This document shows, piece after piece, positions 9,030 through 61,314 of a stretch of DNA of 64,000 bases (positions within the stretch are counted from its first letter, which is position 1; the number at the start of each line of letters is the position of its first letter). The translations under genes were made by a program, and so were the position numbers. The DNA is taken from the sequence record MN047793.1, one strand, 5' to 3'. The notes under the pieces were generated by a model, which saw only the letters and a program-made list of their open reading frames with translations, did no database searches and was not told the origin of the DNA.

Positions 9030-9416
9030 TTATGAAAAATGTGCAGCGCGCGCCATACGCGATTCACTTGCACGATTCCAGTATGTGTCTTTACAATTCG
9101 CCCGGCCCTTGTTAGAACAGAATGCCTGCTGATACGACTTCTTAACGAATGACTTGCCACACGCAGGACATGTGCAGGTTGCACCAGTCTTTGCAGCCTT
9201 GCTCGCCTCGTACACACTCAGGGCATGGATTTTGGCGATGGTTGCAGCAGCTGGACGTTGTGACGTTGGTCGTAGGGAATCCACCGACCGCGAAGTTAAT
9301 GAGCCACATCGGCCATAGACATAAACGAATTCACCCGGACCATCGTGAGAAAATTCGTCATCATCGTCCATATTGTCAGAAAAGGCTTGGCCTTCAGTTC
9401 CGTCCCACTCACGCAT
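9030..9416 (-). CDS. Zinc-finger-containing hypothetical protein
   Basis: CPACGKSF..FCSNKGRANC; AAGGAG RBS. Confidence 0.7.
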   Translation of the reverse strand: MREWDGTEGQAFSDNMDDDDEFSHDGPGEFVYVYGRCGSLTSRSVDSLRPTSQRPAAATIAKIHALSVYEASKAAKTGATCTCPACGKSFVKKSYQQAFCSNKGRANCKDTYWNRASESRMARAAHFS

Positions 9417-12358: not shown

Positions 12359-12889
12359 TCAACGTATGCCGTAATCGTATGCGACCAATTTACCCTTGCG
12401 ATTGTAGCCGACTTGTGCACAATCGACATAACCCACCCAATCCGGTAGAACCTCATAAGGCTCATCCGTGGACTTCACTTGTTCCATGAACAGAATTGGA
12501 GTCTTTTCAAAGTAGGCCAGACGGGTTCTAGCATACTGTACGTTATCAGGGTTATAATCCGGTTCGTCTTCCTTTGCGTTGGAAATACTGCCCTCCCAAT
12601 CGTTATCTGCGTGACCATCCCAGCTAATAGGGAATTTGATAACGTATGGCCCCATCAATAGAACGACACGATTGCGACCATTCGTGACGCCTGAAGCACG
12701 CTTAAAATACTGAACGAATTTGCTTGCGACTTTGGGACCACAACACCCTTTAATAAACTCAACACATTTTTTCATAGTCTCCAGCGTATTGGATTCTACG
12801 GAGTACCATTCTCCAGAATCTGCACGGCCTTGCACCATGTAATGTTGAATCGGGAATTTGTATTGGCGACGGCAACCAATCTTGTGCAT
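12359..12889 (-). CDS. Putative protein-kinase-like (APH/STK fold) protein
   Basis: GRNRVVL..YVIKFP, NxWE, ILFMEQV, DCAQVGY..GKLVAYDYG (DFG-like DYG). Confidence 0.55.
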   Translation of the reverse strand: MHKIGCRRQYKFPIQHYMVQGRADSGEWYSVESNTLETMKKCVEFIKGCCGPKVASKFVQYFKRASGVTNGRNRVVLLMGPYVIKFPISWDGHADNDWEGSISNAKEDEPDYNPDNVQYARTRLAYFEKTPILFMEQVKSTDEPYEVLPDWVGYVDCAQVGYNRKGKLVAYDYGIR

Positions 12890-15387: not shown

Positions 15388-15693
15388 TTACGCCGCTGCG
15401 TTAATTCGGTTAGATATCGTTTGCAAGTCCGTCAAATGTTCAACAGACTTCATATTGTCAGGAGTGCCATGATATACGATGCTGTAACCGATATAGCCGC
15501 GCTTCTTACATTCGTCAGCGGCAATAGCTTTCCAAGTGAAATAACTCTGGCGTGCATCCAGAATGACCACGCTGCGGTCACCAGTGGCATGGATGGGCTT
15601 GCGTTCCCCAAACTGGGGCGGGATAGAACCTTCGACATAGCCGGTGGACAACTGCCAAAATTGAACGTAGGCTTTGACGGTACGAAGGTTCAT
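15388..15693 (-). CDS. Hypothetical protein
   Basis: 101-aa ORF behind promoter cassette B. Confidence 0.7.
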   Translation of the reverse strand: MNLRTVKAYVQFWQLSTGYVEGSIPPQFGERKPIHATGDRSVVILDARQSYFTWKAIAADECKKRGYIGYSIVYHGTPDNMKSVEHLTDLQTISNRINAAA

Positions 15694-15984: not shown

Positions 15985-16257
15985 TTAGTGAAATTTTGCC
16001 TCACGTGCTTTAACCAATGCACGGCGGTCGGCCTTAATTTCAGCCTTGAATTTACGGTTGAATTCCCCATTGAACTCGCGTAGCTTTTTGAATGCCAAGT
16101 CAAACACATACTTAGCAAACTTGAATTCTGGCGTGGCCTTCACATGGTCAGGAGTCAACCCCATGGGACCCTTGGGGAACTTTTGCAGTTCCGCACTCAA
16201 CGTGTCCACCATCAATTCCAATGACTTTTTGTGTGCCTTGGATTCTTCGTAGTTCAT
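15985..16257 (-). CDS. Hypothetical protein
   Basis: 90-aa ORF, GPMGLTPD motif. Confidence 0.7.
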   Translation of the reverse strand: MNYEESKAHKKSLELMVDTLSAELQKFPKGPMGLTPDHVKATPEFKFAKYVFDLAFKKLREFNGEFNRKFKAEIKADRRALVKAREAKFH

Positions 16258-16260
16258 GGC

Positions 16261-16449
16261 TTATGCCCTAGCGTTAATGATATTGAGTGCGTCGGCGAAA
16301 ACTTCGCTTGCCATGTCCCGGCTAAGCCATTGCGCAGAAGTGCCCAATTCAACTGCCGCTTCTGCAATCAAGGTATCTGCATCCATTTCGTTCGTGGTGT
16401 GTGCAATGATTTCCTGCATCGTTTCACGCCATGCCCGATTGCTTGCCAT
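16261..16449 (-). CDS. Hypothetical protein
   Basis: AGGA RBS before MASNRAW. Confidence 0.6.
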   Translation of the reverse strand: MASNRAWRETMQEIIAHTTNEMDADTLIAEAAVELGTSAQWLSRDMASEVFADALNIINARA

Positions 16450-22608: not shown

Positions 22609-23631
22609 ATGCAAAAGTTTAGCTCTATTGAACAGTTCCGCCATGTCATCAAGACTGTGCGTGAGAACAGTGCCTATCACGGCCAGCCGATTCCGACCAT
22701 CGAATACGAAGGTACGGTGAAGCTGCATGGAACTAATGCTGGTGTCCGTGTGTATGAGGATAAGGTGCAGGCACAGAGCCGTGAAAACCTTATCAGCATT
22801 GAAAAGGACAATGCAGGCTTTGCCCATTATGTGGCGCGGAGTGAAATTGCATTCCATCACTTGGTTGCAAATATTGCATTGCACTTTGACCACGCAAGCC
22901 AACATCGTTACACCATCTTTGGTGAATGGTGTGGTGGCAATATTCAGAGCAAGGTTGGCCTGAATACGCTTGAAAAGCATCTTGTCATTTTCAATGTGTA
23001 TGACCACGAAATTCAGAGTTACCTGCCACGTACGTGGATGGATAGCCTGATGGAAAGTAATGCCGTTATGCAATCGCTTCACGACTATAACATCCATCTC
23101 ATCAAGGAAATTCCGACGTTTAATATCAGCATTGATTTTACGCAGCCGGAACAGTACATTGAAGAGTTGGAGCGTCTGACTTTGGAAGTGGAAGAGTCGT
23201 GCCCGTGGACCACGTATCGTGGTGGTACTGGTATCGGTGAAGGCATCGTGTGGGTTAAGAAAGATGCTCCCGGTGATAACCGTTATTGGTTCAAGACCAA
23301 AGGCGTGAAGCACCAGGGCAAGGGCGAAAGTAAGGTGAAGACCTTGAATGTGGACCCTGTGCGTACTGGTAAGATTCGTGATTTGGTGCTGGTACTCACT
23401 CCGGAATGGCGTTTGGAGCAAGGTGTAACCTATCTGCGTGAGAATGGTTATTCGCTTGACCAAAAGGCCACTGGTCAGTTCCTGCAATGGGTGATGAAGG
23501 ATGTTATTAAGGAAGAGTCTGACACCATTGCTGCGAATGAATTCACTTGGAAAGAATTGACCGGGTTGATGACTACTCGCATTCGTGACTGGTATTTTGC
23601 TCACCTTACTTCTGAAGCATTGAAGGCATAA
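22609..23631 (+). CDS. rnlB: RNA ligase, Rnl2 family
   Basis: Motif I KLHGTN, FGEWCG, EGIV, FKTK nucleotidyltransferase motifs; C-terminal helical domain. Confidence 0.85.
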   Translation: MQKFSSIEQFRHVIKTVRENSAYHGQPIPTIEYEGTVKLHGTNAGVRVYEDKVQAQSRENLISIEKDNAGFAHYVARSEIAFHHLVANIALHFDHASQHRYTIFGEWCGGNIQSKVGLNTLEKHLVIFNVYDHEIQSYLPRTWMDSLMESNAVMQSLHDYNIHLIKEIPTFNISIDFTQPEQYIEELERLTLEVEESCPWTTYRGGTGIGEGIVWVKKDAPGDNRYWFKTKGVKHQGKGESKVKTLNVDPVRTGKIRDLVLVLTPEWRLEQGVTYLRENGYSLDQKATGQFLQWVMKDVIKEESDTIAANEFTWKELTGLMTTRIRDWYFAHLTSEALKA

Positions 23632-30431: not shown

Positions 30432-31073
30432 ATGAAAACTACTCTTCCTACCAGCGTTGTCATCCCCGAGTTCATTCAGAACAATGATGTCTTTCTGCAT
30501 GCCGCAGAATTTGCCCATATCCATCATCATGGTGTTGGTCAGACGCGCGAAGCATCGGGTCAGCCGTACATTGTCCATCCTCTTGAGGTGGCGAGTCTGG
30601 TGTATGCCCTTGGTGTGGAGTTCCAGTATCCGCCTGAATGGCTCTCTGTGGCCGTCGTAGCTGCACTGCTACACGACACCATCGAAGACACGAAATGCAC
30701 GTACAACTTGATTGAGACCGATTTTGGGGTGGTTGTACGTGATACTGTCTTCTGGTTGACGGATGTGGTGGATAAGAAGCATGGTAATCGCCGAGTTCGT
30801 AAGGAACTTGAGCGTGTCCGTCTCACTGCTGCACCGGGTCGGGTGAAGTTTGTCAAGTGTTGCGACATCATCGCCAATGCCCGTACGGTACTGGCAGACA
30901 AGCCGGAATCGGCTCAGATGTTCCTCACGGAGAAGATGGCATTGATTGATGCATTCGTGAGTCACAACCGTCTGTATAAGGGTGTAGATGAGCCGAGCAA
31001 GCTGGATAAGCAGATGCTGGCTAAGTGCCGTAATGTACTAGTCGAAATGATGGATAGTGTTTCTAAACCTTAA
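30432..31073 (+). CDS. HD-domain phosphohydrolase, Mesh1/SpoT-hydrolase-like
   Basis: H..QTR..SG.PYIVHP.EVA, AALLHDTIEDT, VKCCD..AN. Confidence 0.85.
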   Translation: MKTTLPTSVVIPEFIQNNDVFLHAAEFAHIHHHGVGQTREASGQPYIVHPLEVASLVYALGVEFQYPPEWLSVAVVAALLHDTIEDTKCTYNLIETDFGVVVRDTVFWLTDVVDKKHGNRRVRKELERVRLTAAPGRVKFVKCCDIIANARTVLADKPESAQMFLTEKMALIDAFVSHNRLYKGVDEPSKLDKQMLAKCRNVLVEMMDSVSKP

Positions 31074-33567: not shown

Positions 33568-33777
33568 ATGTCTGATGATGCTATAAAGCGCCAACGAAAT
33601 GAATTTGATGCGGTACTTGATCTAGTCAATGCCTATAATAGTCTGGCACCTATTGTAGATGATGATTATCCGGAAACCCGCTATCGTTATGAAATGGCTC
33701 TCGGTGGACTAGTAGAGGCAATGAAGGCCAATGAACGATTCGTAGCAGGTAATCGTTTTCACCTAGCAGTTAAATAA
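33568..33777 (+). CDS. Hypothetical protein
   Basis: 69-aa ORF. Confidence 0.6.
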   Translation: MSDDAIKRQRNEFDAVLDLVNAYNSLAPIVDDDYPETRYRYEMALGGLVEAMKANERFVAGNRFHLAVK

Positions 33778-33819
33778 AAGTTGACACCGGCAACTGATTC
33801 AAGTAGTATAGCAGTCATT

Positions 33820-33915
33820 GGGGAGTTAGCTCAGTTGGTAGAGCATCGGGCAATAAACCGGCCGGTTTGCTAGAAGTCCCGAGGGTCGATGGTTCGAGAC
33901 CATCACTCCCCACCA
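33820..33915 (+). ncRNA. tRNA-like RNA with a 27-nt anticodon loop
   Basis: GGGGAGT/ACTCCCC-A-CCA, canonical D and T arms, TCGGG/CCCGA stem enclosing 27 nt. Confidence 0.8.
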
Positions 33916-33933
33916 ATATTATCGAGATTAATA

Positions 33934-34146
33934 ATGACTTACCTTGTAAATCAACCCCTTCGCAAAGGTGATATTGTCAAGGTTGTAGGTAATAAAACTG
34001 GGGTAGACAATGCAATTGGAGTAGTTCATTATATGAACAACCTTACTGCTATTGCAACTATTGACTTTAGACGTACTCGTAAAGAATTACACATTAGTAA
34101 ATTGGAATTAATTGATAGGAAAAATAATCAATTAAATTTATTTTGA
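33934..34146 (+). CDS. Small SH3/KOW-like hypothetical protein
   Basis: LRKGDIVKV..G.V. Confidence 0.55.
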   Translation: MTYLVNQPLRKGDIVKVVGNKTGVDNAIGVVHYMNNLTAIATIDFRRTRKELHISKLELIDRKNNQLNLF

Positions 34147-34254
34147 CAATTTAATACAGAAACACTAAATAAGAATTATGAACAAACTTTATTACAAACG
34201 ATATTATAAAAAGCTTCCGTAAGGATTGCGTACGTTTGTATGCGGTCCTGCAAC

Positions 34255-34330
34255 GGGACCGTAGCTCAATGGTTAGAGCATTCGCCTCTTAAGCGACAGG
34301 TTGTGAGTTCGAGTCTCACCGGTCCCACCA
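34255..34330 (+). tRNA. tRNA-Lys(CTT)
   Basis: Loop CTCTTAA, CCA. Confidence 0.9.
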
Positions 34331-34352: not shown

Positions 34353-34592
34353 ATGTATACACTAGAACAGTTAGCGCTTTTTGATAGATGCTTGTTCCCT
34401 GGAGATTTTCAGACTCAGTTGATGAATGTTGGTATGTCTGGGTTCCAAGCAGCTGTGATTAGTGGATTCATAGAATCGAATCGACGTAAGGGTAACATGG
34501 TAGGAATTATTCAAGTGTATCAAGAATTTATCGATAGTGAAGAAATAACCAAGGCAATCGATGCCGTTGTAAGTGAGTTCGTAAACAAGTAA
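34353..34592 (+). CDS. Hypothetical protein
   Basis: 79-aa ORF between tRNAs. Confidence 0.55.
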   Translation: MYTLEQLALFDRCLFPGDFQTQLMNVGMSGFQAAVISGFIESNRRKGNMVGIIQVYQEFIDSEEITKAIDAVVSEFVNK

Positions 34593-34599
34593 AGAATAA

Positions 34600-34675
<76 letters not shown>

Positions 34676-34764: not shown

Positions 34765-34851
34765 GGATGAGTATGCAAGCGGTCAAAGCTCGGGGACTGT
34801 AAATCCTCTCCCTTAACGGGTTCGTAGGTTCAAATCCTACTTCATCCACCA
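34765..34851 (+). tRNA. tRNA-Tyr(GTA)
   Basis: Type II, loop CTGTAAA, CCA. Confidence 0.92.
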
Positions 34852-34936
34852 AATCAGAAGTCAAGTATCGAAAGGTGCTTGACTTTTTTATTTTCTATCG
34901 TTATAATTTAAATATCACTCAACTAGGAAATTTTAC

Positions 34937-36790: not shown

Positions 36791-36866
36791 GGCCTTGTAG
36801 CTCAGCGGTCAGAGCAGGAGCCTCTAAAACTCTAGGTCGTGGGTTCGATCCCCACCAAGGCCACCA
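36791..36866 (+). tRNA. tRNA with CTA anticodon (amber suppressor-type), Lys-like body
   Basis: GGCCTTG/CAAGGCC-A-CCA; arm GGAGC-CTCTAAA-ACTCT; T arm like the neighbouring Lys(TTT). Confidence 0.85.
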
Positions 36867-37534: not shown

Positions 37535-37631
37535 GGGGAGTAAGCACATTGGTTATGGGCATCGACTGAGGAGGGAGTGAAACCTAACTCCGGCGAAGGT
37601 AGTGAGGTTCGATTCCTCATACTCTCCACCA
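37535..37631 (+). ncRNA. tRNA-like RNA with expanded anticodon domain
   Basis: GGGGAGT/ACTCTCC-A-CCA, T arm TGAGG-TTCGATT-CCTCA, internal GGAG/CTCC hairpin; own sigma70 promoter. Confidence 0.7.
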
Positions 37632-39002: not shown

Positions 39003-39083
39003 TATGACTGTAGAGGGATTCGTCCCTCAGATGTTGAAATGAAGGACAGGAACACGGGAGTTCGATTCTCCCCAGGTCCACCA
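39003..39083 (+). ncRNA. ssrA: tmRNA acceptor piece (3' part of a permuted ssrA; 5' boundary approximate)
   Basis: GGGAG-TTCGATT-CTCCC T arm, CAGGTCC-A-CCA; pairs with GGGCCTG at 39231 giving G3:U70. Confidence 0.85.
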
Positions 39084-39230
39084 AAAATATATTACCCTAC
39101 CCAAGGGGTTGTCAGCAGGGTTGGAAGGACTGACACATGCAAAAACTATTCAGCCGTTGTAATGGCGTGTTGTTGGGAAGGTTCAAAATCCCGGTATAAA
39201 TGAATAGCGAATCCGTAATGTATTTTTGAT

Positions 39231-39410
39231 GGGCCTGCACTGGTTTCGACTCTTGGAGATAATGGAGATTGACAGTTGGTCACACAAGACTTTAAAATGA
39301 AGACAGAGAAGTCTCTAATCACAAAGAATTAAACGACAACGTTGATTCATTCGATTTCGCCATGGCGGCCTAATCCCAAGCACATCTAGCACTTGGTCAC
39401 CCGACGCTAG
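39231..39410 (+). ncRNA. ssrA: tmRNA coding piece (5' acceptor strand plus tag ORF; 3' boundary approximate)
   Basis: GGGCCTGcaCTGGTTTCGAC start; tag reading frame ...NDNVDSFDFAMAA* at 39332-39373. Confidence 0.88.
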
Positions 39411-40247: not shown

Positions 40248-40884
40248 TTGATGGGTGGTCGGTAGCTCTACAAGGCCCTATTATTACTCCATATCTTTAG
40301 CGAAAGTGCACGCCCGGAATTAACTGGGTCTGCGGTATGCAGAGGGAGATTGATTATTATCTACACATGACCCATCAATTTTTAATTGGATAGAGTGCAG
40401 TTAGCCGGTATCATTGGAAATATCCAAGCATCGCAAAGTGACAATGCCGATGATATCCTGATGCACATAATCCATACTAATACTGATGCGATAAAGTGTA
40501 AGTGGCTACATACAAGGCTCATAACCTTGAGTGCCGGTTCGACTCCGGAATTCGCTACCAAATTGTAAACATCATGCAAAATGTGTAAAAATAGTGATCA
40601 CTGATCGGCTAGTGAAACAGATTAGGATGTTGTTTACAACCAAATACCATCAGGTCAAAAGTTAACGACTAGTATTAACGAGTATGTGTAAGAACATATA
40701 CCTATGGTACCCAAATCAAAGCATGTGATTCATGCCCCGCCACATGGGAAGCGTGGCTCTGCTCTATCATTGCAAACTGTATATGATATGCGTTTTGATG
40801 GTTTCAAGTAAACCATTGGTGCTAAGCCGGTTTTGGGAGTCATTTTCTGCACCCGATAAAGAAAACTCCACATGGTCTGGTATT
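40248..40884 (+). ncRNA. Second block of stem-closed structured RNA cassettes
   Basis: Closing helices 40248-56/40370-78, 40563-70/40632-39, 40643-49/40878-84; T-loop+ACCA end at 40533-40560; no credible ORF. Confidence 0.5.
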
Positions 40885-47562: not shown

Positions 47563-47664
47563 AGTCCTGTTGCTAATGTTGGCCGTAGGGGCACCCTTAT
47601 ACAGTGCTAGAGCAATCTCCAGATAAGAGATGTAACGTGGGTTCGATTCCCACCGGGACTACCA
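47563..47664 (+). tRNA. Atypical tRNA-Ile(TAT)-like RNA with a 29-nt variable region
   Basis: AGTCCTG/CGGGACT-A-CCA; GCACC-CTTATAC-AGTGC; ATCTC/GAGAT extra hairpin. Confidence 0.65.
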
Positions 47665-48471: not shown

Positions 48472-48560
48472 GGCTAGGTGGCGGAGAAGTCGAACGCAGG
48501 GGACTGCAAATCCTCATGGAGAAATCCTCATCACAGGTGCAAATCCTGTTCTGGCCTCCA
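48472..48560 (+). tRNA. tRNA-Cys(GCA) with long variable arm
   Basis: Loop CTGCAAA, U73, 17-nt variable region. Confidence 0.85.
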
Positions 48561-48764: not shown

Positions 48765-48851
48765 GGGTCAGTCGCTCAGCGGCCGAGAGCACGAGACTGT
48801 TAATCTCGCGACGAAAGTCCATCGCTGGTTCGAATCCAGCCTGTCCCTCCA
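48765..48851 (+). tRNA. tRNA-Asn(GTT) with long variable arm
   Basis: Loop CTGTTAA; GAC-GAAA-GTC extra arm; U73. Confidence 0.82.
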
Positions 48852-49078: not shown

Positions 49079-49154
49079 GGGAATGTAGCTCAGTTGGTAG
49101 AGCAGTCGCTTGAAAAGCTTCGTGTCATAGGTTCAATTCCTATCATTCCCACCA
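49079..49154 (+). tRNA. tRNA-Phe(GAA), weak anticodon stem
   Basis: GTCGC-TTGAAAA-GCTTC (two mismatches). Confidence 0.75.
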
Positions 49155-49694: not shown

Positions 49695-49770
49695 TGGACT
49701 GTAGCTCAGGGGTTAGAGCGTCCGGCTGATAACCGGGAGGTCGATGGTTCGAAACCATCTAGTCCAACCA
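49695..49770 (+). tRNA. tRNA-Ile(GAT)
   Basis: Loop CTGATAA. Confidence 0.95.
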
Positions 49771-59654: not shown

Positions 59655-60080
59655 TCATAAAACCATGTCCTCAGTCTTATACGAATATGCGCTTTCGTTA
59701 CCATCAAACTCTTCAAACGCGACCAAATATCCAGGCCGTCCCCACTGTACACACAATTCATGCGCAGACCAATAAGCATCCGGCCACTTAGTATTGGCGT
59801 AGTTAATGATTTCAATATAACGACGCTTCAATTCCGGGTGCTTAGCAGAATCCCAATTACGCTTTTCCGCATGTGCCAATACATCTTCATTGGCTTTAAT
59901 CCAATCCCATACGTTTAACACCATCCTAATCAAGGTGGGGTCTGTTCCGCAATCTGGATACGTATCACCATTTTGACTAAACCAGCCAACTCCATAGCCA
60001 GGGGATACAATGTATCCCACTTCACCCTTGTCATTATAATATCGATTAGTCTGCCGTGGAAGATTCATCAGTGATTCCAT
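59655..60080 (-). CDS. Conserved phage hypothetical protein
   Basis: SPGYG.GWFS..EFDGNES. Confidence 0.7.
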   Translation of the reverse strand: MESLMNLPRQTNRYYNDKGEVGYIVSPGYGVGWFSQNGDTYPDCGTDPTLIRMVLNVWDWIKANEDVLAHAEKRNWDSAKHPELKRRYIEIINYANTKWPDAYWSAHELCVQWGRPGYLVAFEEFDGNESAYSYKTEDMVL

Positions 60081-61215
60081 AAAGCTTATAGTTCTTAATC
60101 AAATGTTCCTTCAGGCCCATATCACGACCAATATACAGGTTCATCGCCAGAGAGAATACACCATCTGCCTTAAGCACTTCCTGTCCCTTGATTGCATAAT
60201 CCTTACGAGACAGCCCAGCATTTTCATTGTAGAATTCTTCCACCACACGATGCAGTCGGTTATACAGGGTCCGCCCCTTTTCTTCCATCTGTTCGATACG
60301 CAGAATTGCCAGCGGGTCCGCCACAAACAGCGCCTTGAGGTCATCCGACTGTTCCATGATGACAGACTCAAACAGACGACGCGGGTTGTTAATCTGGTCC
60401 TTTTGCAGATGCAGATTGGAATACCAGTTAGTCTTAAGCTTTACCTTGAGACCATTCTGGAAAGTGAACACATATCCTTCGATACCCGTCATCTCCCGCA
60501 CTTCCTCCACAAACGCTTCCATGTCGGCCGGCAGCGGATGTTCCTTACGCGTGAACCATTCCGGGAAGCCAGACGTTGCAAGGTCCACATATTCGCCAGT
60601 ACCATTGTGACGAATGTTCAGAACGCGAAGCGTCGGCTTGGAATATCCGATAACAATCTGGTTATCCGGAGCCATGTATTCCATGTTGACAGTGCAGCCA
60701 AGGTCCACATAGCCAGCAACCAACTTCTGAAATTCCCAATACTCTTCAGTCTCGATAAGAGCCTGTGCCGCAACTGCCTGAGCAGACGACAGAGAAGTCT
60801 TAGACTTCAGAATGAAACTGCGACCAGCATTGACAGCCTGACGCGGCAATGCCACCGTTGAGATAAGCGAACCGTCCAGCTTGTCTTCAATGGAAACCAC
60901 CTTGGTCCAATCAAGGTCCATGGTGAACGGGTTCTCACCCACATTGAAAAACTTCTGCATCGGCAGCGAAACCAGAATCGGCTCTACCTGTGCATAGCCA
61001 CCATTCTCAGAAACTGCCACGGTGTCCGTATCATTATACGGAAGCAGGAAGGTATGACCACGGCATTCCAATGCACCCGGCTTCAGGAATTCGGTGTAAG
61101 ACGCAAGACGATACGTGAACACGCGAAACGTCCGGCCATAGCGAACATGGTCCACAAAATAGAACGCATCAGTGTCTGCACACAAGGCCATCAGTTGGGA
61201 GTAAAGGTTACGCAT
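60046..61215 (-). CDS. rnlA: RNA ligase, T4 RnlA (Rnl1) family
   Basis: Y.LAS..F..GALECRG, MQKFFNVGE, KLDGSLIS, EGYV, KLKT.WY.H. Confidence 0.9.
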   Translation of the reverse strand: MRNLYSQLMALCADTDAFYFVDHVRYGRTFRVFTYRLASYTEFLKPGALECRGHTFLLPYNDTDTVAVSENGGYAQVEPILVSLPMQKFFNVGENPFTMDLDWTKVVSIEDKLDGSLISTVALPRQAVNAGRSFILKSKTSLSSAQAVAAQALIETEEYWEFQKLVAGYVDLGCTVNMEYMAPDNQIVIGYSKPTLRVLNIRHNGTGEYVDLATSGFPEWFTRKEHPLPADMEAFVEEVREMTGIEGYVFTFQNGLKVKLKTNWYSNLHLQKDQINNPRRLFESVIMEQSDDLKALFVADPLAILRIEQMEEKGRTLYNRLHRVVEEFYNENAGLSRKDYAIKGQEVLKADGVFSLAMNLYIGRDMGLKEHLIKNYKLYGITDESSTAD

Positions 61216-61314
61216 ATAAGTTCTTCCTGTCATTTGATGGATAAATTATAGAACAAAAAATGGGCCGTGTCAATAAGACACAGCCCATGAAGTACAACAA
61301 ATTGGGATTTTGTA

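What the first reader, a model, noticed from the sequence alone, without database searches (positions are those of the whole stretch)
33820..33915. Otherwise perfect tRNA with a 27-nt anticodon loop containing a 14-nt palindrome
The acceptor, D, anticodon-stem, variable and T elements are all canonical. The loop is CAATAAACCGGCCGGTTTGCTAGAAGT and includes the self-complementary AAACCGGCCGGTTT. Removing 20 nt near the 5' side would leave a 7-nt loop with GAA (Phe), and the regular Phe tRNA here has a defective stem. It may be an intron-like insert needing ligase, or a non-decoding decoy or dimerising RNA. It has its own sigma70 promoter at ~33781.
Basis: partly seen in the sequence, partly recalled or inferred. 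Interest (0 to 1): 0.75.

Follow-up and report, generated by a model that had tools for sequence, protein, structure and literature searches.

The report
Phage tRNA mimic with palindromic anticodon loop
A giant Xanthomonas phage makes a tRNA-shaped RNA whose codon-reading loop is replaced by a self-pairing segment kept by selection in related phages, so it is most likely a non-decoding tRNA mimic, not a tRNA awaiting splicing.

Summary
Window 33820-33915 (Xanthomonas jumbo phage Xoo-sp13) scores as a tRNA (Rfam 57 bits). All four stems are perfect and CCA is encoded, but the anticodon loop has 27 nt and holds the palindrome AAACCGGCCGGTTT. A TTGACA-17-TAGTAT promoter starts at 33781.

The intron / tRNA-Phe reading fails:
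- No single deletion restores U33.
- There is no bulge-helix-bulge motif, and 20 nt is too short for a group I intron.
- The phage has no splicing endonuclease or RtcB.
- An ortholog (L017) with an identical body has GCA where Xoo-sp13 has GAA.

It is not a dead gene either. Against L017 the body is 68/69 identical and the palindrome 14/14, while the flanking ORF is 71% and the neighbouring tRNA-Lys 77%. A third ortholog (L078) carries a different perfect palindrome, GGTTGCGCAACC, centred on the same column. Five of seven pairs changed on both sides, including the central pair, which cannot form within one hairpin.

Best reading: a non-decoding tRNA-like RNA with a selected self-complementary module (hairpin or tail-to-tail dimer). 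It heads an operon with tRNA-Lys(CUU), tRNA-Lys(UUU) and tRNA-Tyr. A decoy role against tRNA-targeting host factors is inferred, not shown. Earlier first-reader notes of this scan had already flagged sibling tRNA-like RNAs in this window.

The parts
33781..33809 (+). sigma-70-type promoter (TTGACA, 17 nt, TAGTAT); predicted start a few nt before G33820
   Evidence: Promoter-like hexamers read from the sequences stand directly upstream of most of the related elements: L029, L017, XacN1 and L027 and L076; L078's lies about 80 nt upstream, behind a leader.
33820..33915 (+). tRNA-like RNA gene (96 nt with encoded CCA), canonical acceptor, D and T arms and anticodon stem
   Evidence: Rfam RF00005 at 57 bits; ARAGORN; fold; orthologs L017:1925-2017 and L078:2082-2174.
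33851..33877 (+). 27-nt 'anticodon loop': linker CAAU, self-complementary segment, linker GCUAGAAGU; A at position 33
   Evidence: The loop flanks are the only fast-changing part between orthologs: 7 of 13 identical against 82 of 83 elsewhere.
33855..33868 (+). perfect 14-nt palindrome AAACCGGCCGGTTT (6-bp hairpin with GGCC loop, or 14-16-bp intermolecular duplex)
   Evidence: It occurs once in the 309-kb genome. It is 14/14 conserved in L017 and replaced by GGTTGCGCAACC at the same centre in L078. Predicted dimer is 18.9 kcal/mol more stable than two monomers.
33934..34146 (+). small ORF (Xoosp13_79, 70 aa), no known domain; absent from close relatives
   Evidence: Replaced by 29 nt in the wastewater relative and absent in L017.
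34161..34254 (+). highly conserved non-coding leader in front of tRNA-Lys(CUU)
   Evidence: Nearly identical to L017, where other flanks are 50-70%. Recognisable in L028, L076, L078 and XacN1.
34255..34330 (+). tRNA-Lys(CUU), same predicted transcription unit
34353..34592 (+). small ORF (Xoosp13_80, 79 aa), no known domain, conserved in relatives
34600..34675 (+). tRNA-Lys(UUU)
34765..34851 (+). tRNA-Tyr(GUA)
34856..34887 (+). strong intrinsic-terminator-like hairpin (14 pairs plus T run) that closes the unit

Best explanation
33820-33915 encodes a stable tRNA-shaped RNA that does not decode. Host RNA polymerase transcribes it from its own sigma-70-type promoter. It is the first gene of a small unit: tRNA-like RNA, ORF79, tRNA-Lys(CUU), ORF80, tRNA-Lys(UUU), tRNA-Tyr(GUA), terminator. 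It keeps everything that tRNA-processing and tRNA-binding proteins see in the upper body: a 7-bp acceptor stem, A73, an encoded CCA and the D/T elbow. RNase P and the 3'-end enzymes should therefore mature it like a tRNA. The anticodon loop is replaced by two short, fast-evolving, mostly A-rich linkers around a perfectly self-complementary segment. That segment folds as a hairpin or pairs with a second copy into a 14-16-bp duplex, joining two molecules tail to tail. Without a 7-nt loop and without U33 it cannot read a codon. Shown here: the anatomy, the conservation and the covariation. Inferred: expression, processing and the choice between dimer and hairpin. The proposed role is the most speculative step, at roughly 0.3: a tRNA mimic that occupies a tRNA-binding factor without entering translation. 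The most attractive target is a host tRNA-targeting defence enzyme, because the unit also supplies tRNA-Lys and tRNA-Tyr.
For: - It is a tRNA by covariance model, with the insert confined to the anticodon loop.
- Against the ortholog L017 the body is 68/69 identical and the palindrome 14/14. The loop flanks are 7/13, the flanking ORF78 71%, the promoter/leader 49%, and the adjacent genuine tRNA-Lys(CUU) 77% with compensatory changes.
- The ortholog L078 has about 80% body identity with compensatory changes in the acceptor, anticodon and T stems. It carries a different perfect palindrome at the same centre. Five of 7 palindrome pairs changed on both sides, including the central pair, and 97.6% of cells pair against 40-56% when partners are slid.
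- A wastewater relative keeps the gene with 3 differences and no gaps although it lost ORF79.
- Promoter and terminator define the unit.
- Promoter-driven tRNA-likes with closed or non-U33 anticodon arms fill the same slot in relatives: XacN1, L027, L029, L076. Another one, with no promoter-like site seen upstream, stands in the tRNA cluster of an unplaced viral contig, L030.
- Across 8 such RNAs the acceptor, D and T helices are 98.4% paired, with 8 covarying pairs.
- The phage carries tRNA-repair and maintenance genes: Rnl1-like and Rnl2-like ligases, an AAA_33 kinase, a CCA-adding enzyme and an HD hydrolase.
- Published work shows that phages evade the retron-Eco7 effector PtuAB, whose expression leads to tRNA-Tyr degradation, by expressing tRNA-Tyr, and counteract PrrC170, a tRNA anticodon defence system, by expressing tRNA-Lys (PMC11555353).
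Against: - There are no expression, processing, charging or binding data.
- Only three orthologs exist, giving two independent palindromes.
- The closest relative found (L029, ORF78 about 95% identical at the DNA level) has only a truncated 3' remnant of this gene. Behind the same promoter it carries a different tRNA-like RNA with a 7-nt loop. The gene is therefore dispensable or replaceable.
- Near-total identity of the body with L017 could partly reflect recent exchange rather than constraint.
- The decoy role rests on context only. The isotype of the body is ambiguous: the nearest matches are Lys, Val and Met tRNAs, in a biased sample.
- Perfect palindromes could also arise by a DNA-level inverted-duplication process.
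Confidence: 0.55

Rival explanations
1. Intron-containing tRNA. About 20 nt are cut from the loop and the halves are rejoined by a phage RNA ligase, giving a tRNA-Phe(GAA) that replaces the mismatched regular tRNA-Phe.
For: Removing 20 nt leaves CAGAAGU. The phage encodes Rnl1-like and Rnl2-like ligases. The regular tRNA-Phe has two anticodon-stem mismatches. The syntenic XacN1 element shares its acceptor stem with tRNA-Phe.
Against: All single deletions leave A33. The insert is one straight hairpin, so there is no BHB motif. Twenty nt is far too short for a group I intron, and Rfam finds no intron model there. The phage has no EndA and no RtcB. The would-be anticodon is GAA in Xoo-sp13, GCA in L017 and AAU in L078, on the same body. 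What is conserved is the insert, not the residual loop. XacN1 tRNA-Phe shares the U28.U42 mismatch.
Confidence: 0.03
2. Dead tRNA gene: a former tRNA (Lys/Val type) inactivated by a palindromic insertion and now drifting. This matches the 'pseudogene' label given to one tRNA-like sequence per terminal repeat of XacN1; the paper does not say which, and the counterpart of this gene is unannotated there.
For: XacN1 authors list one tRNA pseudogene per terminal repeat (PMC5852040). L029 shows a truncated remnant and a replacement at this locus.
Against: Body 68/69 and palindrome 14/14 identical, where neighbouring coding and non-coding DNA is 49-71%. L078 shows compensatory changes in three stems and a new perfect palindrome. 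The gene keeps its own promoter.
Confidence: 0.08
3. The selected feature is the DNA palindrome, for example a binding site for a dimeric protein, a cruciform or a recombination site. The tRNA-like gene merely hosts it.
For: The palindrome is perfect including its centre, which a simple RNA hairpin does not require. The locus is recombinationally active.
Against: The palindrome sequence is completely different in L078 (GGTTGCGCAACC against AAACCGGCCGGTTT), while its place within the RNA fold is kept. A fixed protein site would conserve sequence, not only symmetry. The palindrome occurs once in the genome. The RNA body around it is under strong constraint.
Confidence: 0.07
4. Cis-acting processing or stability module. 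The tRNA-like fold at the 5' end of the transcript recruits RNase P and other tRNA-processing enzymes to mature or stabilise the downstream ORF79/tRNA-Lys/tRNA-Tyr transcript. The RNA has no role of its own.
For: It lies directly after the promoter, with no terminator before 34856. tRNA-like elements head comparable units in relatives.
Against: A processing signal would not need a selected self-complementary insert in the anticodon loop, nor near-perfect sequence conservation of every arm. Ordinary tRNAs in the cluster already provide such signals.
Confidence: 0.12
5. A chargeable but non-ribosomal tRNA. It is aminoacylated through acceptor-stem identity and used as an amino-acid donor, or to titrate a synthetase or EF-Tu.
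For: Intact acceptor stem, A73 and CCA. A sibling RNA at 37535-37631 even has G3:U70, the alanine identity pair.
Against: This RNA has G3:C70 and no long variable arm. Most synthetases for Lys/Val/Met-type bodies need the anticodon (established knowledge, not tested here).
Confidence: 0.07

Closest known systems
Canonical elongator tRNA (Rfam RF00005), especially phage tRNA-Lys/Val/Met types
   Same: Full cloverleaf, conserved tertiary nucleotides (U8, A14, G18G19, G15:C48, T54-T55-C56), A73 and encoded CCA; scores 57 bits.
   Different: 27-nt loop instead of 7, A33 instead of U33, and no conserved anticodon among orthologs.
Intron-containing tRNAs (archaeal/eukaryal BHB introns; bacterial group I introns in anticodon loops)
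   Same: Extra sequence inside the anticodon loop of an otherwise normal tRNA gene.
   Different: No BHB motif, no splicing endonuclease, an insert ten-fold too short for group I, and a residual loop that is not conserved.
Unassigned RNAs of phage tRNA clusters: T4 RNAC and RNAD, and the XacN1 tRNA 'pseudogene'
   Same: Small RNA genes embedded in a phage tRNA cluster. The roles of the T4 RNAs are unknown (PMC3014915); XacN1 is reported to hold one tRNA 'pseudogene' per terminal repeat (PMC5852040).
   Different: Here orthologs show purifying selection and covariation of a self-complementary loop module. No such feature is reported for those RNAs. The paper does not identify the XacN1 pseudogene, and the syntenic element seen here is unannotated in the record.
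Bacillus cereus tRNA-Other (pseudo-tRNA)
   Same: A tRNA-shaped RNA that does not function in translation yet has a physiological role (PMC3399842).
   Different: That RNA is chromosomal and bacterial and flanks a genomic island. No palindromic insert is known to me for it (from memory).
Phage tRNAs that counter tRNA-targeting defences
   Same: Phage-encoded and strongly promoted, in a tRNA-rich region, in a unit with tRNA-Lys and tRNA-Tyr (PMC11555353).
   Different: Those are functional decoding tRNAs that replenish the pool. This one cannot decode, so it would have to act by mimicry.
Self-complementary RNA dimerisation elements (for example the retroviral dimer initiation site; from memory)
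   Same: A GC-rich, perfectly self-complementary segment flanked by purine-rich single strands.
   Different: It is embedded in a tRNA anticodon arm, and dimerisation is untested here.

Membership tests
Canonical decoding tRNA | Cloverleaf with 7/4/5/5-bp stems and conserved elbow nucleotides | tested here: met
   all stems Watson-Crick, 57 bits on RF00005.
Canonical decoding tRNA | 7-nt anticodon loop with U33 and a purine at 37 | tested here: not met
   The loop has 27 nt. Every single contiguous deletion to 7 nt leaves A33. Orthologs have 24 and 25 nt.
Canonical decoding tRNA | Anticodon conserved among orthologs | tested here: not met
   The three letters at the would-be anticodon position are GAA, GCA and AAU in Xoo-sp13, L017 and L078.
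tRNA with archaeal/eukaryal-type intron | Bulge-helix-bulge motif at the exon-intron junctions | tested here: not met
   The insert folds as one uninterrupted hairpin with no 3-nt bulges flanking a 4-bp helix (inspection).
tRNA with archaeal/eukaryal-type intron | Splicing endonuclease (EndA) and a joining ligase available | tested here: not met
   PF01974 and RtcB (PF01139) are absent from the 309-kb genome. Rnl1-like and Rnl2-like ligases are present. Bacteria lack EndA (established knowledge).
Group I intron in a tRNA anticodon loop | Catalytic core of about 200 nt or more (P1-P9) | tested here: not met
   The insert is 20 nt. Rfam finds no intron family at E up to 10.
tRNA pseudogene | Relaxed constraint compared with functional neighbours | tested here: not met
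   Body 68/69 and palindrome 14/14 identical, against 77% for the adjacent tRNA-Lys and 49-71% for the flanks. L078 shows compensatory changes.
tmRNA tRNA-like domain | G3:U70 and an absent anticodon arm, joined to an mRNA-like part | tested here: not met
   It has G3:C70 and an anticodon stem, and Rfam gives no tmRNA match here. The phage's tmRNA is at 39030-39373.
Y RNA-like (YrlA) tRNA mimics | Ro-binding helix formed by the RNA ends, and a Ro/TROVE partner protein | tested here: not met
   No YrlA/YrlB match at this site. TROVE is absent from Xoo-sp13 and XacN1. The RNA ends form an acceptor stem with CCA.
Non-decoding tRNA-like RNA (functional mimic) | tRNA fold under selection, no usable anticodon loop, expressed and stable | tested here: inconclusive
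   Fold, selection and lack of a usable loop are shown. Expression is only predicted from the promoter. The public runs that hold relatives gave contigs only, most probably DNA, and no usable RNA evidence.

The most novel reading that the evidence does not exclude
This phage lineage encodes promoter-driven, anticodon-less tRNA mimics as swappable cassettes. The type studied here pairs tail to tail through its self-complementary loop segment into a two-headed tRNA dimer. That dimer traps a multimeric tRNA-binding enzyme, such as an anticodon nuclease or another tRNA-targeting defence, and so protects the phage's and host's real tRNA-Lys and tRNA-Tyr. It would be an RNA-based anti-defence decoy of a kind not yet described.
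Probability: 0.2. Interest if true: 0.85.

Novelty: new variant of a known kind. Interest (0 to 1): 0.62.

Why it matters
Phage tRNA clusters are now understood partly as counter-measures to bacterial immunity that cuts tRNAs. This RNA cannot decode, yet it is better conserved than the genuine tRNA beside it. Its loop insert is kept self-complementary through a complete change of sequence. That points to tRNA mimicry, not tRNA supply, as a second strategy. It also suggests that items labelled 'tRNA pseudogenes' in jumbo-phage genomes are worth re-examining as a possible hidden class of functional RNAs. It offers a simple test system: one 96-nt RNA, one palindrome, and clear compensatory-mutation experiments.

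Tried and rejected
- **Splicing readings.** I enumerated all single deletions that give a 7-nt loop, and all leave A33. I looked for a BHB motif and found none. Rfam at E up to 10 over 33700-34000 gave only the tRNA hit. EndA, RtcB and TROVE searches of the whole phage genome were negative.
- **Mobile palindromic element.** The palindrome occurs once in Xoo-sp13 and not in XacN1 or CM1. Site counts for CGGCCG, GCCGGC, CCGG and GGCC are unremarkable.
- **Overlapping coding.** Only mechanical ORFs of at most 34 aa, plus an upstream extension of ORF79, overlap the gene.
- **Homolog hunts that found nothing.** These were the INPHARED phage collection by DNA, IMG/VR patterns, both JGI metagenome scans, and an HD-hydrolase-guided IMG/VR locus, which was unrelated. 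The acceptor-anchored scans of viral and prokaryote contigs mainly returned ordinary Val, Met and Lys tRNAs with the same acceptor stem. P0016 contigs had an unrelated context.
- **Isotype assignment.** Nearest matches are Lys(UUU), Val and Met tRNAs, but the sample is biased, so I left the isotype open.
- **RNA evidence.** The runs labelled RNA-Seq that hold relatives are probably DNA and exist only as contigs, so they say nothing about expression or splicing.
- **ORF78 as partner.** A homolog lies next to the element in five relatives. The XacN1 neighbour is only 18% identical, and L018 has the ORF without an element. I did not pursue it.
- **Not run.** I did not model a complex of two RNA copies. 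It would only restate the base complementarity.

Full report
**Origin and observation.** The window is bases 1-64000 of Xanthomonas oryzae jumbo phage Xoo-sp13 (MN047793.1, 309 kb), with identical coordinates. The record annotates no RNA genes in this region. ARAGORN finds 26 tRNA genes between 32.6 and 52.9 kb, covering all 20 amino acids plus a CUA suppressor. Rfam adds a permuted tmRNA at 39030-39373.

- a 7-bp acceptor stem, 4-bp D stem, 5-bp anticodon stem (UCGGG/CCCGA) and 5-bp T stem
- variable region GGGTC, A73 and an encoded CCA
- a 27-nt loop made of CAAT, AAACCGGCCGGTTT and GCTAGAAGT

Rfam's tRNA model gives 57 bits and places the extra letters in the anticodon loop. A TTGACA-17-TAGTAT promoter starts at 33781. 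A 14-nt palindrome alone is not unusual: the window has 5 against 4.25 expected. This one occurs once in the genome.

**Surroundings.** No terminator follows the gene. The next strong one is at 34856-34887, after tRNA-Tyr. The predicted unit is therefore: promoter, tRNA-like RNA, ORF79, a conserved leader, tRNA-Lys(CUU), ORF80, tRNA-Lys(UUU), tRNA-Tyr(GUA), terminator. ORF78, ORF79 and ORF80 have no known domains. No credible ORF overlaps the gene on either strand.

The phage encodes several genes that repair or maintain tRNA:
- a T4 Rnl1-like ligase at 60046-61233 and an Rnl2-like ligase at 22609-23631
- an AAA_33 kinase and a CCA-adding enzyme
- an HD-domain hydrolase at 30432-31073 at the head of the tRNA region

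**Relatives.** The phage database holds only distant kin: XacN1 (rIIA 40% identical) and Stenotrophomonas phages CM1 and RAS14 (32%). Gene order around the site is shared with XacN1: HD hydrolase, tRNA-Ser(UGA), the element, tRNA-Lys, tRNA-Lys, tRNA-Tyr, suppressor.

In the same slot XacN1 has an unannotated 109-nt tRNA-like gene. It has its own TTGACA-17-TAATAT promoter and a long irregular anticodon arm. The XacN1 paper reports one tRNA 'pseudogene' per terminal repeat (PMC5852040), without saying where it lies.

Closer relatives came from metagenomes, reached through neighbouring proteins:
- L017:1925-2017 (ORF78 69% identical at protein level) is a clear ortholog with a 24-nt loop: CAC, the same palindrome, AAGCAGT.
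- L078:2082-2174 is a more distant ortholog with a 25-nt loop: AAAAA, GGTTGCGCAACC, AAAATAAT.
- A wastewater contig keeps 33781-33916 with 3 differences and no gaps, while ORF79 is replaced by 29 nt.
- L029, the closest relative (ORF78 about 95% identical at the DNA level), has a truncated 3' half of the gene. Behind a nearly identical promoter and the same acceptor stem it carries a different 79-nt tRNA-like RNA with loop CAUACGC, again with A33.

**Constraint.** Aligned with L017:

| Segment | Identity to L017 |
|---|---|
| tRNA-like body | 68/69 |
| Palindrome | 14/14 |
| Loop flanks | 7/13 |
| ORF78 (DNA) | 71% |
| Promoter and leader | 49% |
| Adjacent tRNA-Lys(CUU) | 77%, with compensatory stem changes |

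The gene is thus more conserved than a genuine tRNA next to it, and change is concentrated in the two linkers.

With L078 added, the cloverleaf shows compensatory changes at pairs 7:66, 31:39 and 49:65. The palindrome helix has 5 of 7 pairs changed on both sides while still pairing. Overall 97.6% of cells pair, against 40-56% when partners are slid by one to three columns.

The central pair changes from G-C to C-G, and the central four letters (GGCC, GCGC) stay self-complementary. A single hairpin cannot use those pairs. This favours selection on the whole segment as a duplex, or a process that generates perfect palindromes. Folding predicts a 6-bp hairpin with a GGCC loop. The homodimer is predicted to be 18.9 kcal/mol more stable than two monomers.

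**Against splicing.**
- Every single deletion that restores a 7-nt loop leaves A33.
- The insert is a straight hairpin with no bulge-helix-bulge motif.
- Twenty nucleotides cannot hold a group I core, and Rfam sees none.
- EndA and RtcB are absent from the genome.
- On one and the same body the would-be anticodon is GAA, GCA or AAU in the three orthologs.
- XacN1's tRNA-Phe shares the U28.U42 mismatch, so the mismatched stem is at least partly ancestral and tolerated.

**Against a dead gene or a DNA site.** The conservation and covariation above are not expected for a pseudogene. A fixed protein-binding site would conserve sequence, but here only the symmetry and the position within the RNA fold are kept.

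**A wider class.** The same lineage holds other tRNA-likes, most of them promoter-driven, with closed or abnormal anticodon arms:

| Element | Feature |
|---|---|
| window 37535-37631 | Same GGGGAGU start, G3:U70 |
| window 47563-47664 | D-loop insert, loop CAGAUAA with A33 |
| L030 | Anticodon arm capped by a GCAA tetraloop |
| L027 and XacN1 | Shared 3' half |
| L076 | Duplicated D-arm segment, loop GUAAAAC |
| L078:2181-2255 | G33 |

Across eight of them the acceptor, D and T helices are 98.4% paired, with eight covarying pairs. Contigs and L029 show duplications, remnants and replacements at this slot. That turnover is typical of accessory genes that face the host.

**Mechanism.** I conclude that this is a non-decoding tRNA-like RNA with a selected self-complementary module.

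Its role is inferred only. Published work shows that phage tRNA-Tyr and tRNA-Lys rescue infection from the retron-Eco7 effector PtuAB and from PrrC (PMC11555353), and that jumbo phages carry several tRNA-repair systems (PMC7824862). This RNA heads the unit that supplies exactly those tRNAs and presents a complete tRNA upper body.

A mimic that occupies a tRNA-targeting or tRNA-binding factor is therefore the most economical proposal, at about 0.3. A tail-to-tail dimer is a plausible form, at about 0.35-0.4.

**Limits.**
- There are no transcript data.
- There are only two independent palindromes.
- The gene is dispensable in at least one close relative.
- The high identity with L017 may be partly due to recent exchange.

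**Comparison with known kinds.** It is tRNA-derived but fails the defining loop features of a decoding tRNA. It also fails the tests for intron-bearing tRNAs, the tmRNA tRNA-like domain and Y-RNA-like mimics. It resembles other non-decoding tRNA-like RNAs, namely B. cereus tRNA-Other (PMC3399842) and the unassigned T4 RNAs C and D (PMC3014915). It differs from them by the covarying palindromic loop. Four targeted full-text searches of the open-access library turned up no description of such a phage RNA; papers outside that library were not covered.

Noticed in passing
window 37535-37631 (+): A second tRNA-like RNA that starts with the same GGGGAGU. It has an 8-bp acceptor stem containing G3:U70 (the alanine identity pair), a hairpin-extended central arm and its own TTGACG promoter. 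RF00005 does not detect it.
   Followed up: partly
window 47563-47664 (+): A 102-nt tRNA-like (Rfam 35 bits) directly after a tRNA-Met. It has a roughly 25-nt hairpin insert in the D loop and an anticodon loop CAGAUAA: the GAU anticodon of Ile, but with A33. A canonical tRNA-Ile(GAU) stands at 49695.
   Followed up: partly
window 34161-34254 (+): A non-coding leader of about 95 nt in front of tRNA-Lys(CUU). It is nearly identical in L017 and recognisable in L028, L076, L078 and XacN1, while surrounding DNA is 50-70% identical. It may be a structured processing or regulatory element.
   Followed up: no
window 48472-48560 and 48765-48851; L074 (XacN1) 764-852, 9254-9339, 12770-12860, 15403-15491, 16180-16268: tRNA-Cys and tRNA-Asn carry long, class-II-like variable arms, as do Gly, Thr and Lys in XacN1. 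Each arm is a short hairpin, and in those read out, except XacN1 Gly, it is followed by CATC. This is unusual for these isotypes and recurs across the lineage.
   Followed up: no
window 49079-49154 (+): tRNA-Phe(GAA) has two mismatches in its anticodon stem (U28.U42 and C29.U41). XacN1's ortholog has only U28.U42.
   Followed up: partly
window 36791-36866 (+): An amber-suppressor-type tRNA (anticodon CUA), also present in XacN1 (two copies) and in CM1.
   Followed up: no
window 40487-40560 (+): A weak tRNA-like (27 bits) with loop CUCAUAA (CAU) and a poor acceptor stem. It may be a third Met/Ile2-type gene or another mimic.
   Followed up: no
window 30432-31073 (+): The gene annotated 'GTP pyrophosphokinase' matches only HD hydrolase domains (HD_4), so it looks like a small alarmone-hydrolase-type protein. 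It is 73% identical in XacN1 and always sits at the head of the tRNA region.
   Followed up: partly
L029:343-381 and 544-622: In the closest metagenomic relative, a truncated 3' half of the palindrome-type gene lies just before a spacer, a nearly identical promoter and a different 79-nt tRNA-like RNA. This looks like cassette replacement at the locus.
   Followed up: partly
L022:14742-15168: A GOLLD RNA (Rfam 211 bits) in a metagenomic phage contig that carries a 49%-identical homolog of ORF80 (34353-34592) and some of the other gene families of this region (HD_4, Band_7).
   Followed up: no
L078:2181-2255: A tRNA-like gene 6 nt after the palindrome-type ortholog. It has a good cloverleaf, but its loop CGUUGAG has G33.
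   Followed up: no
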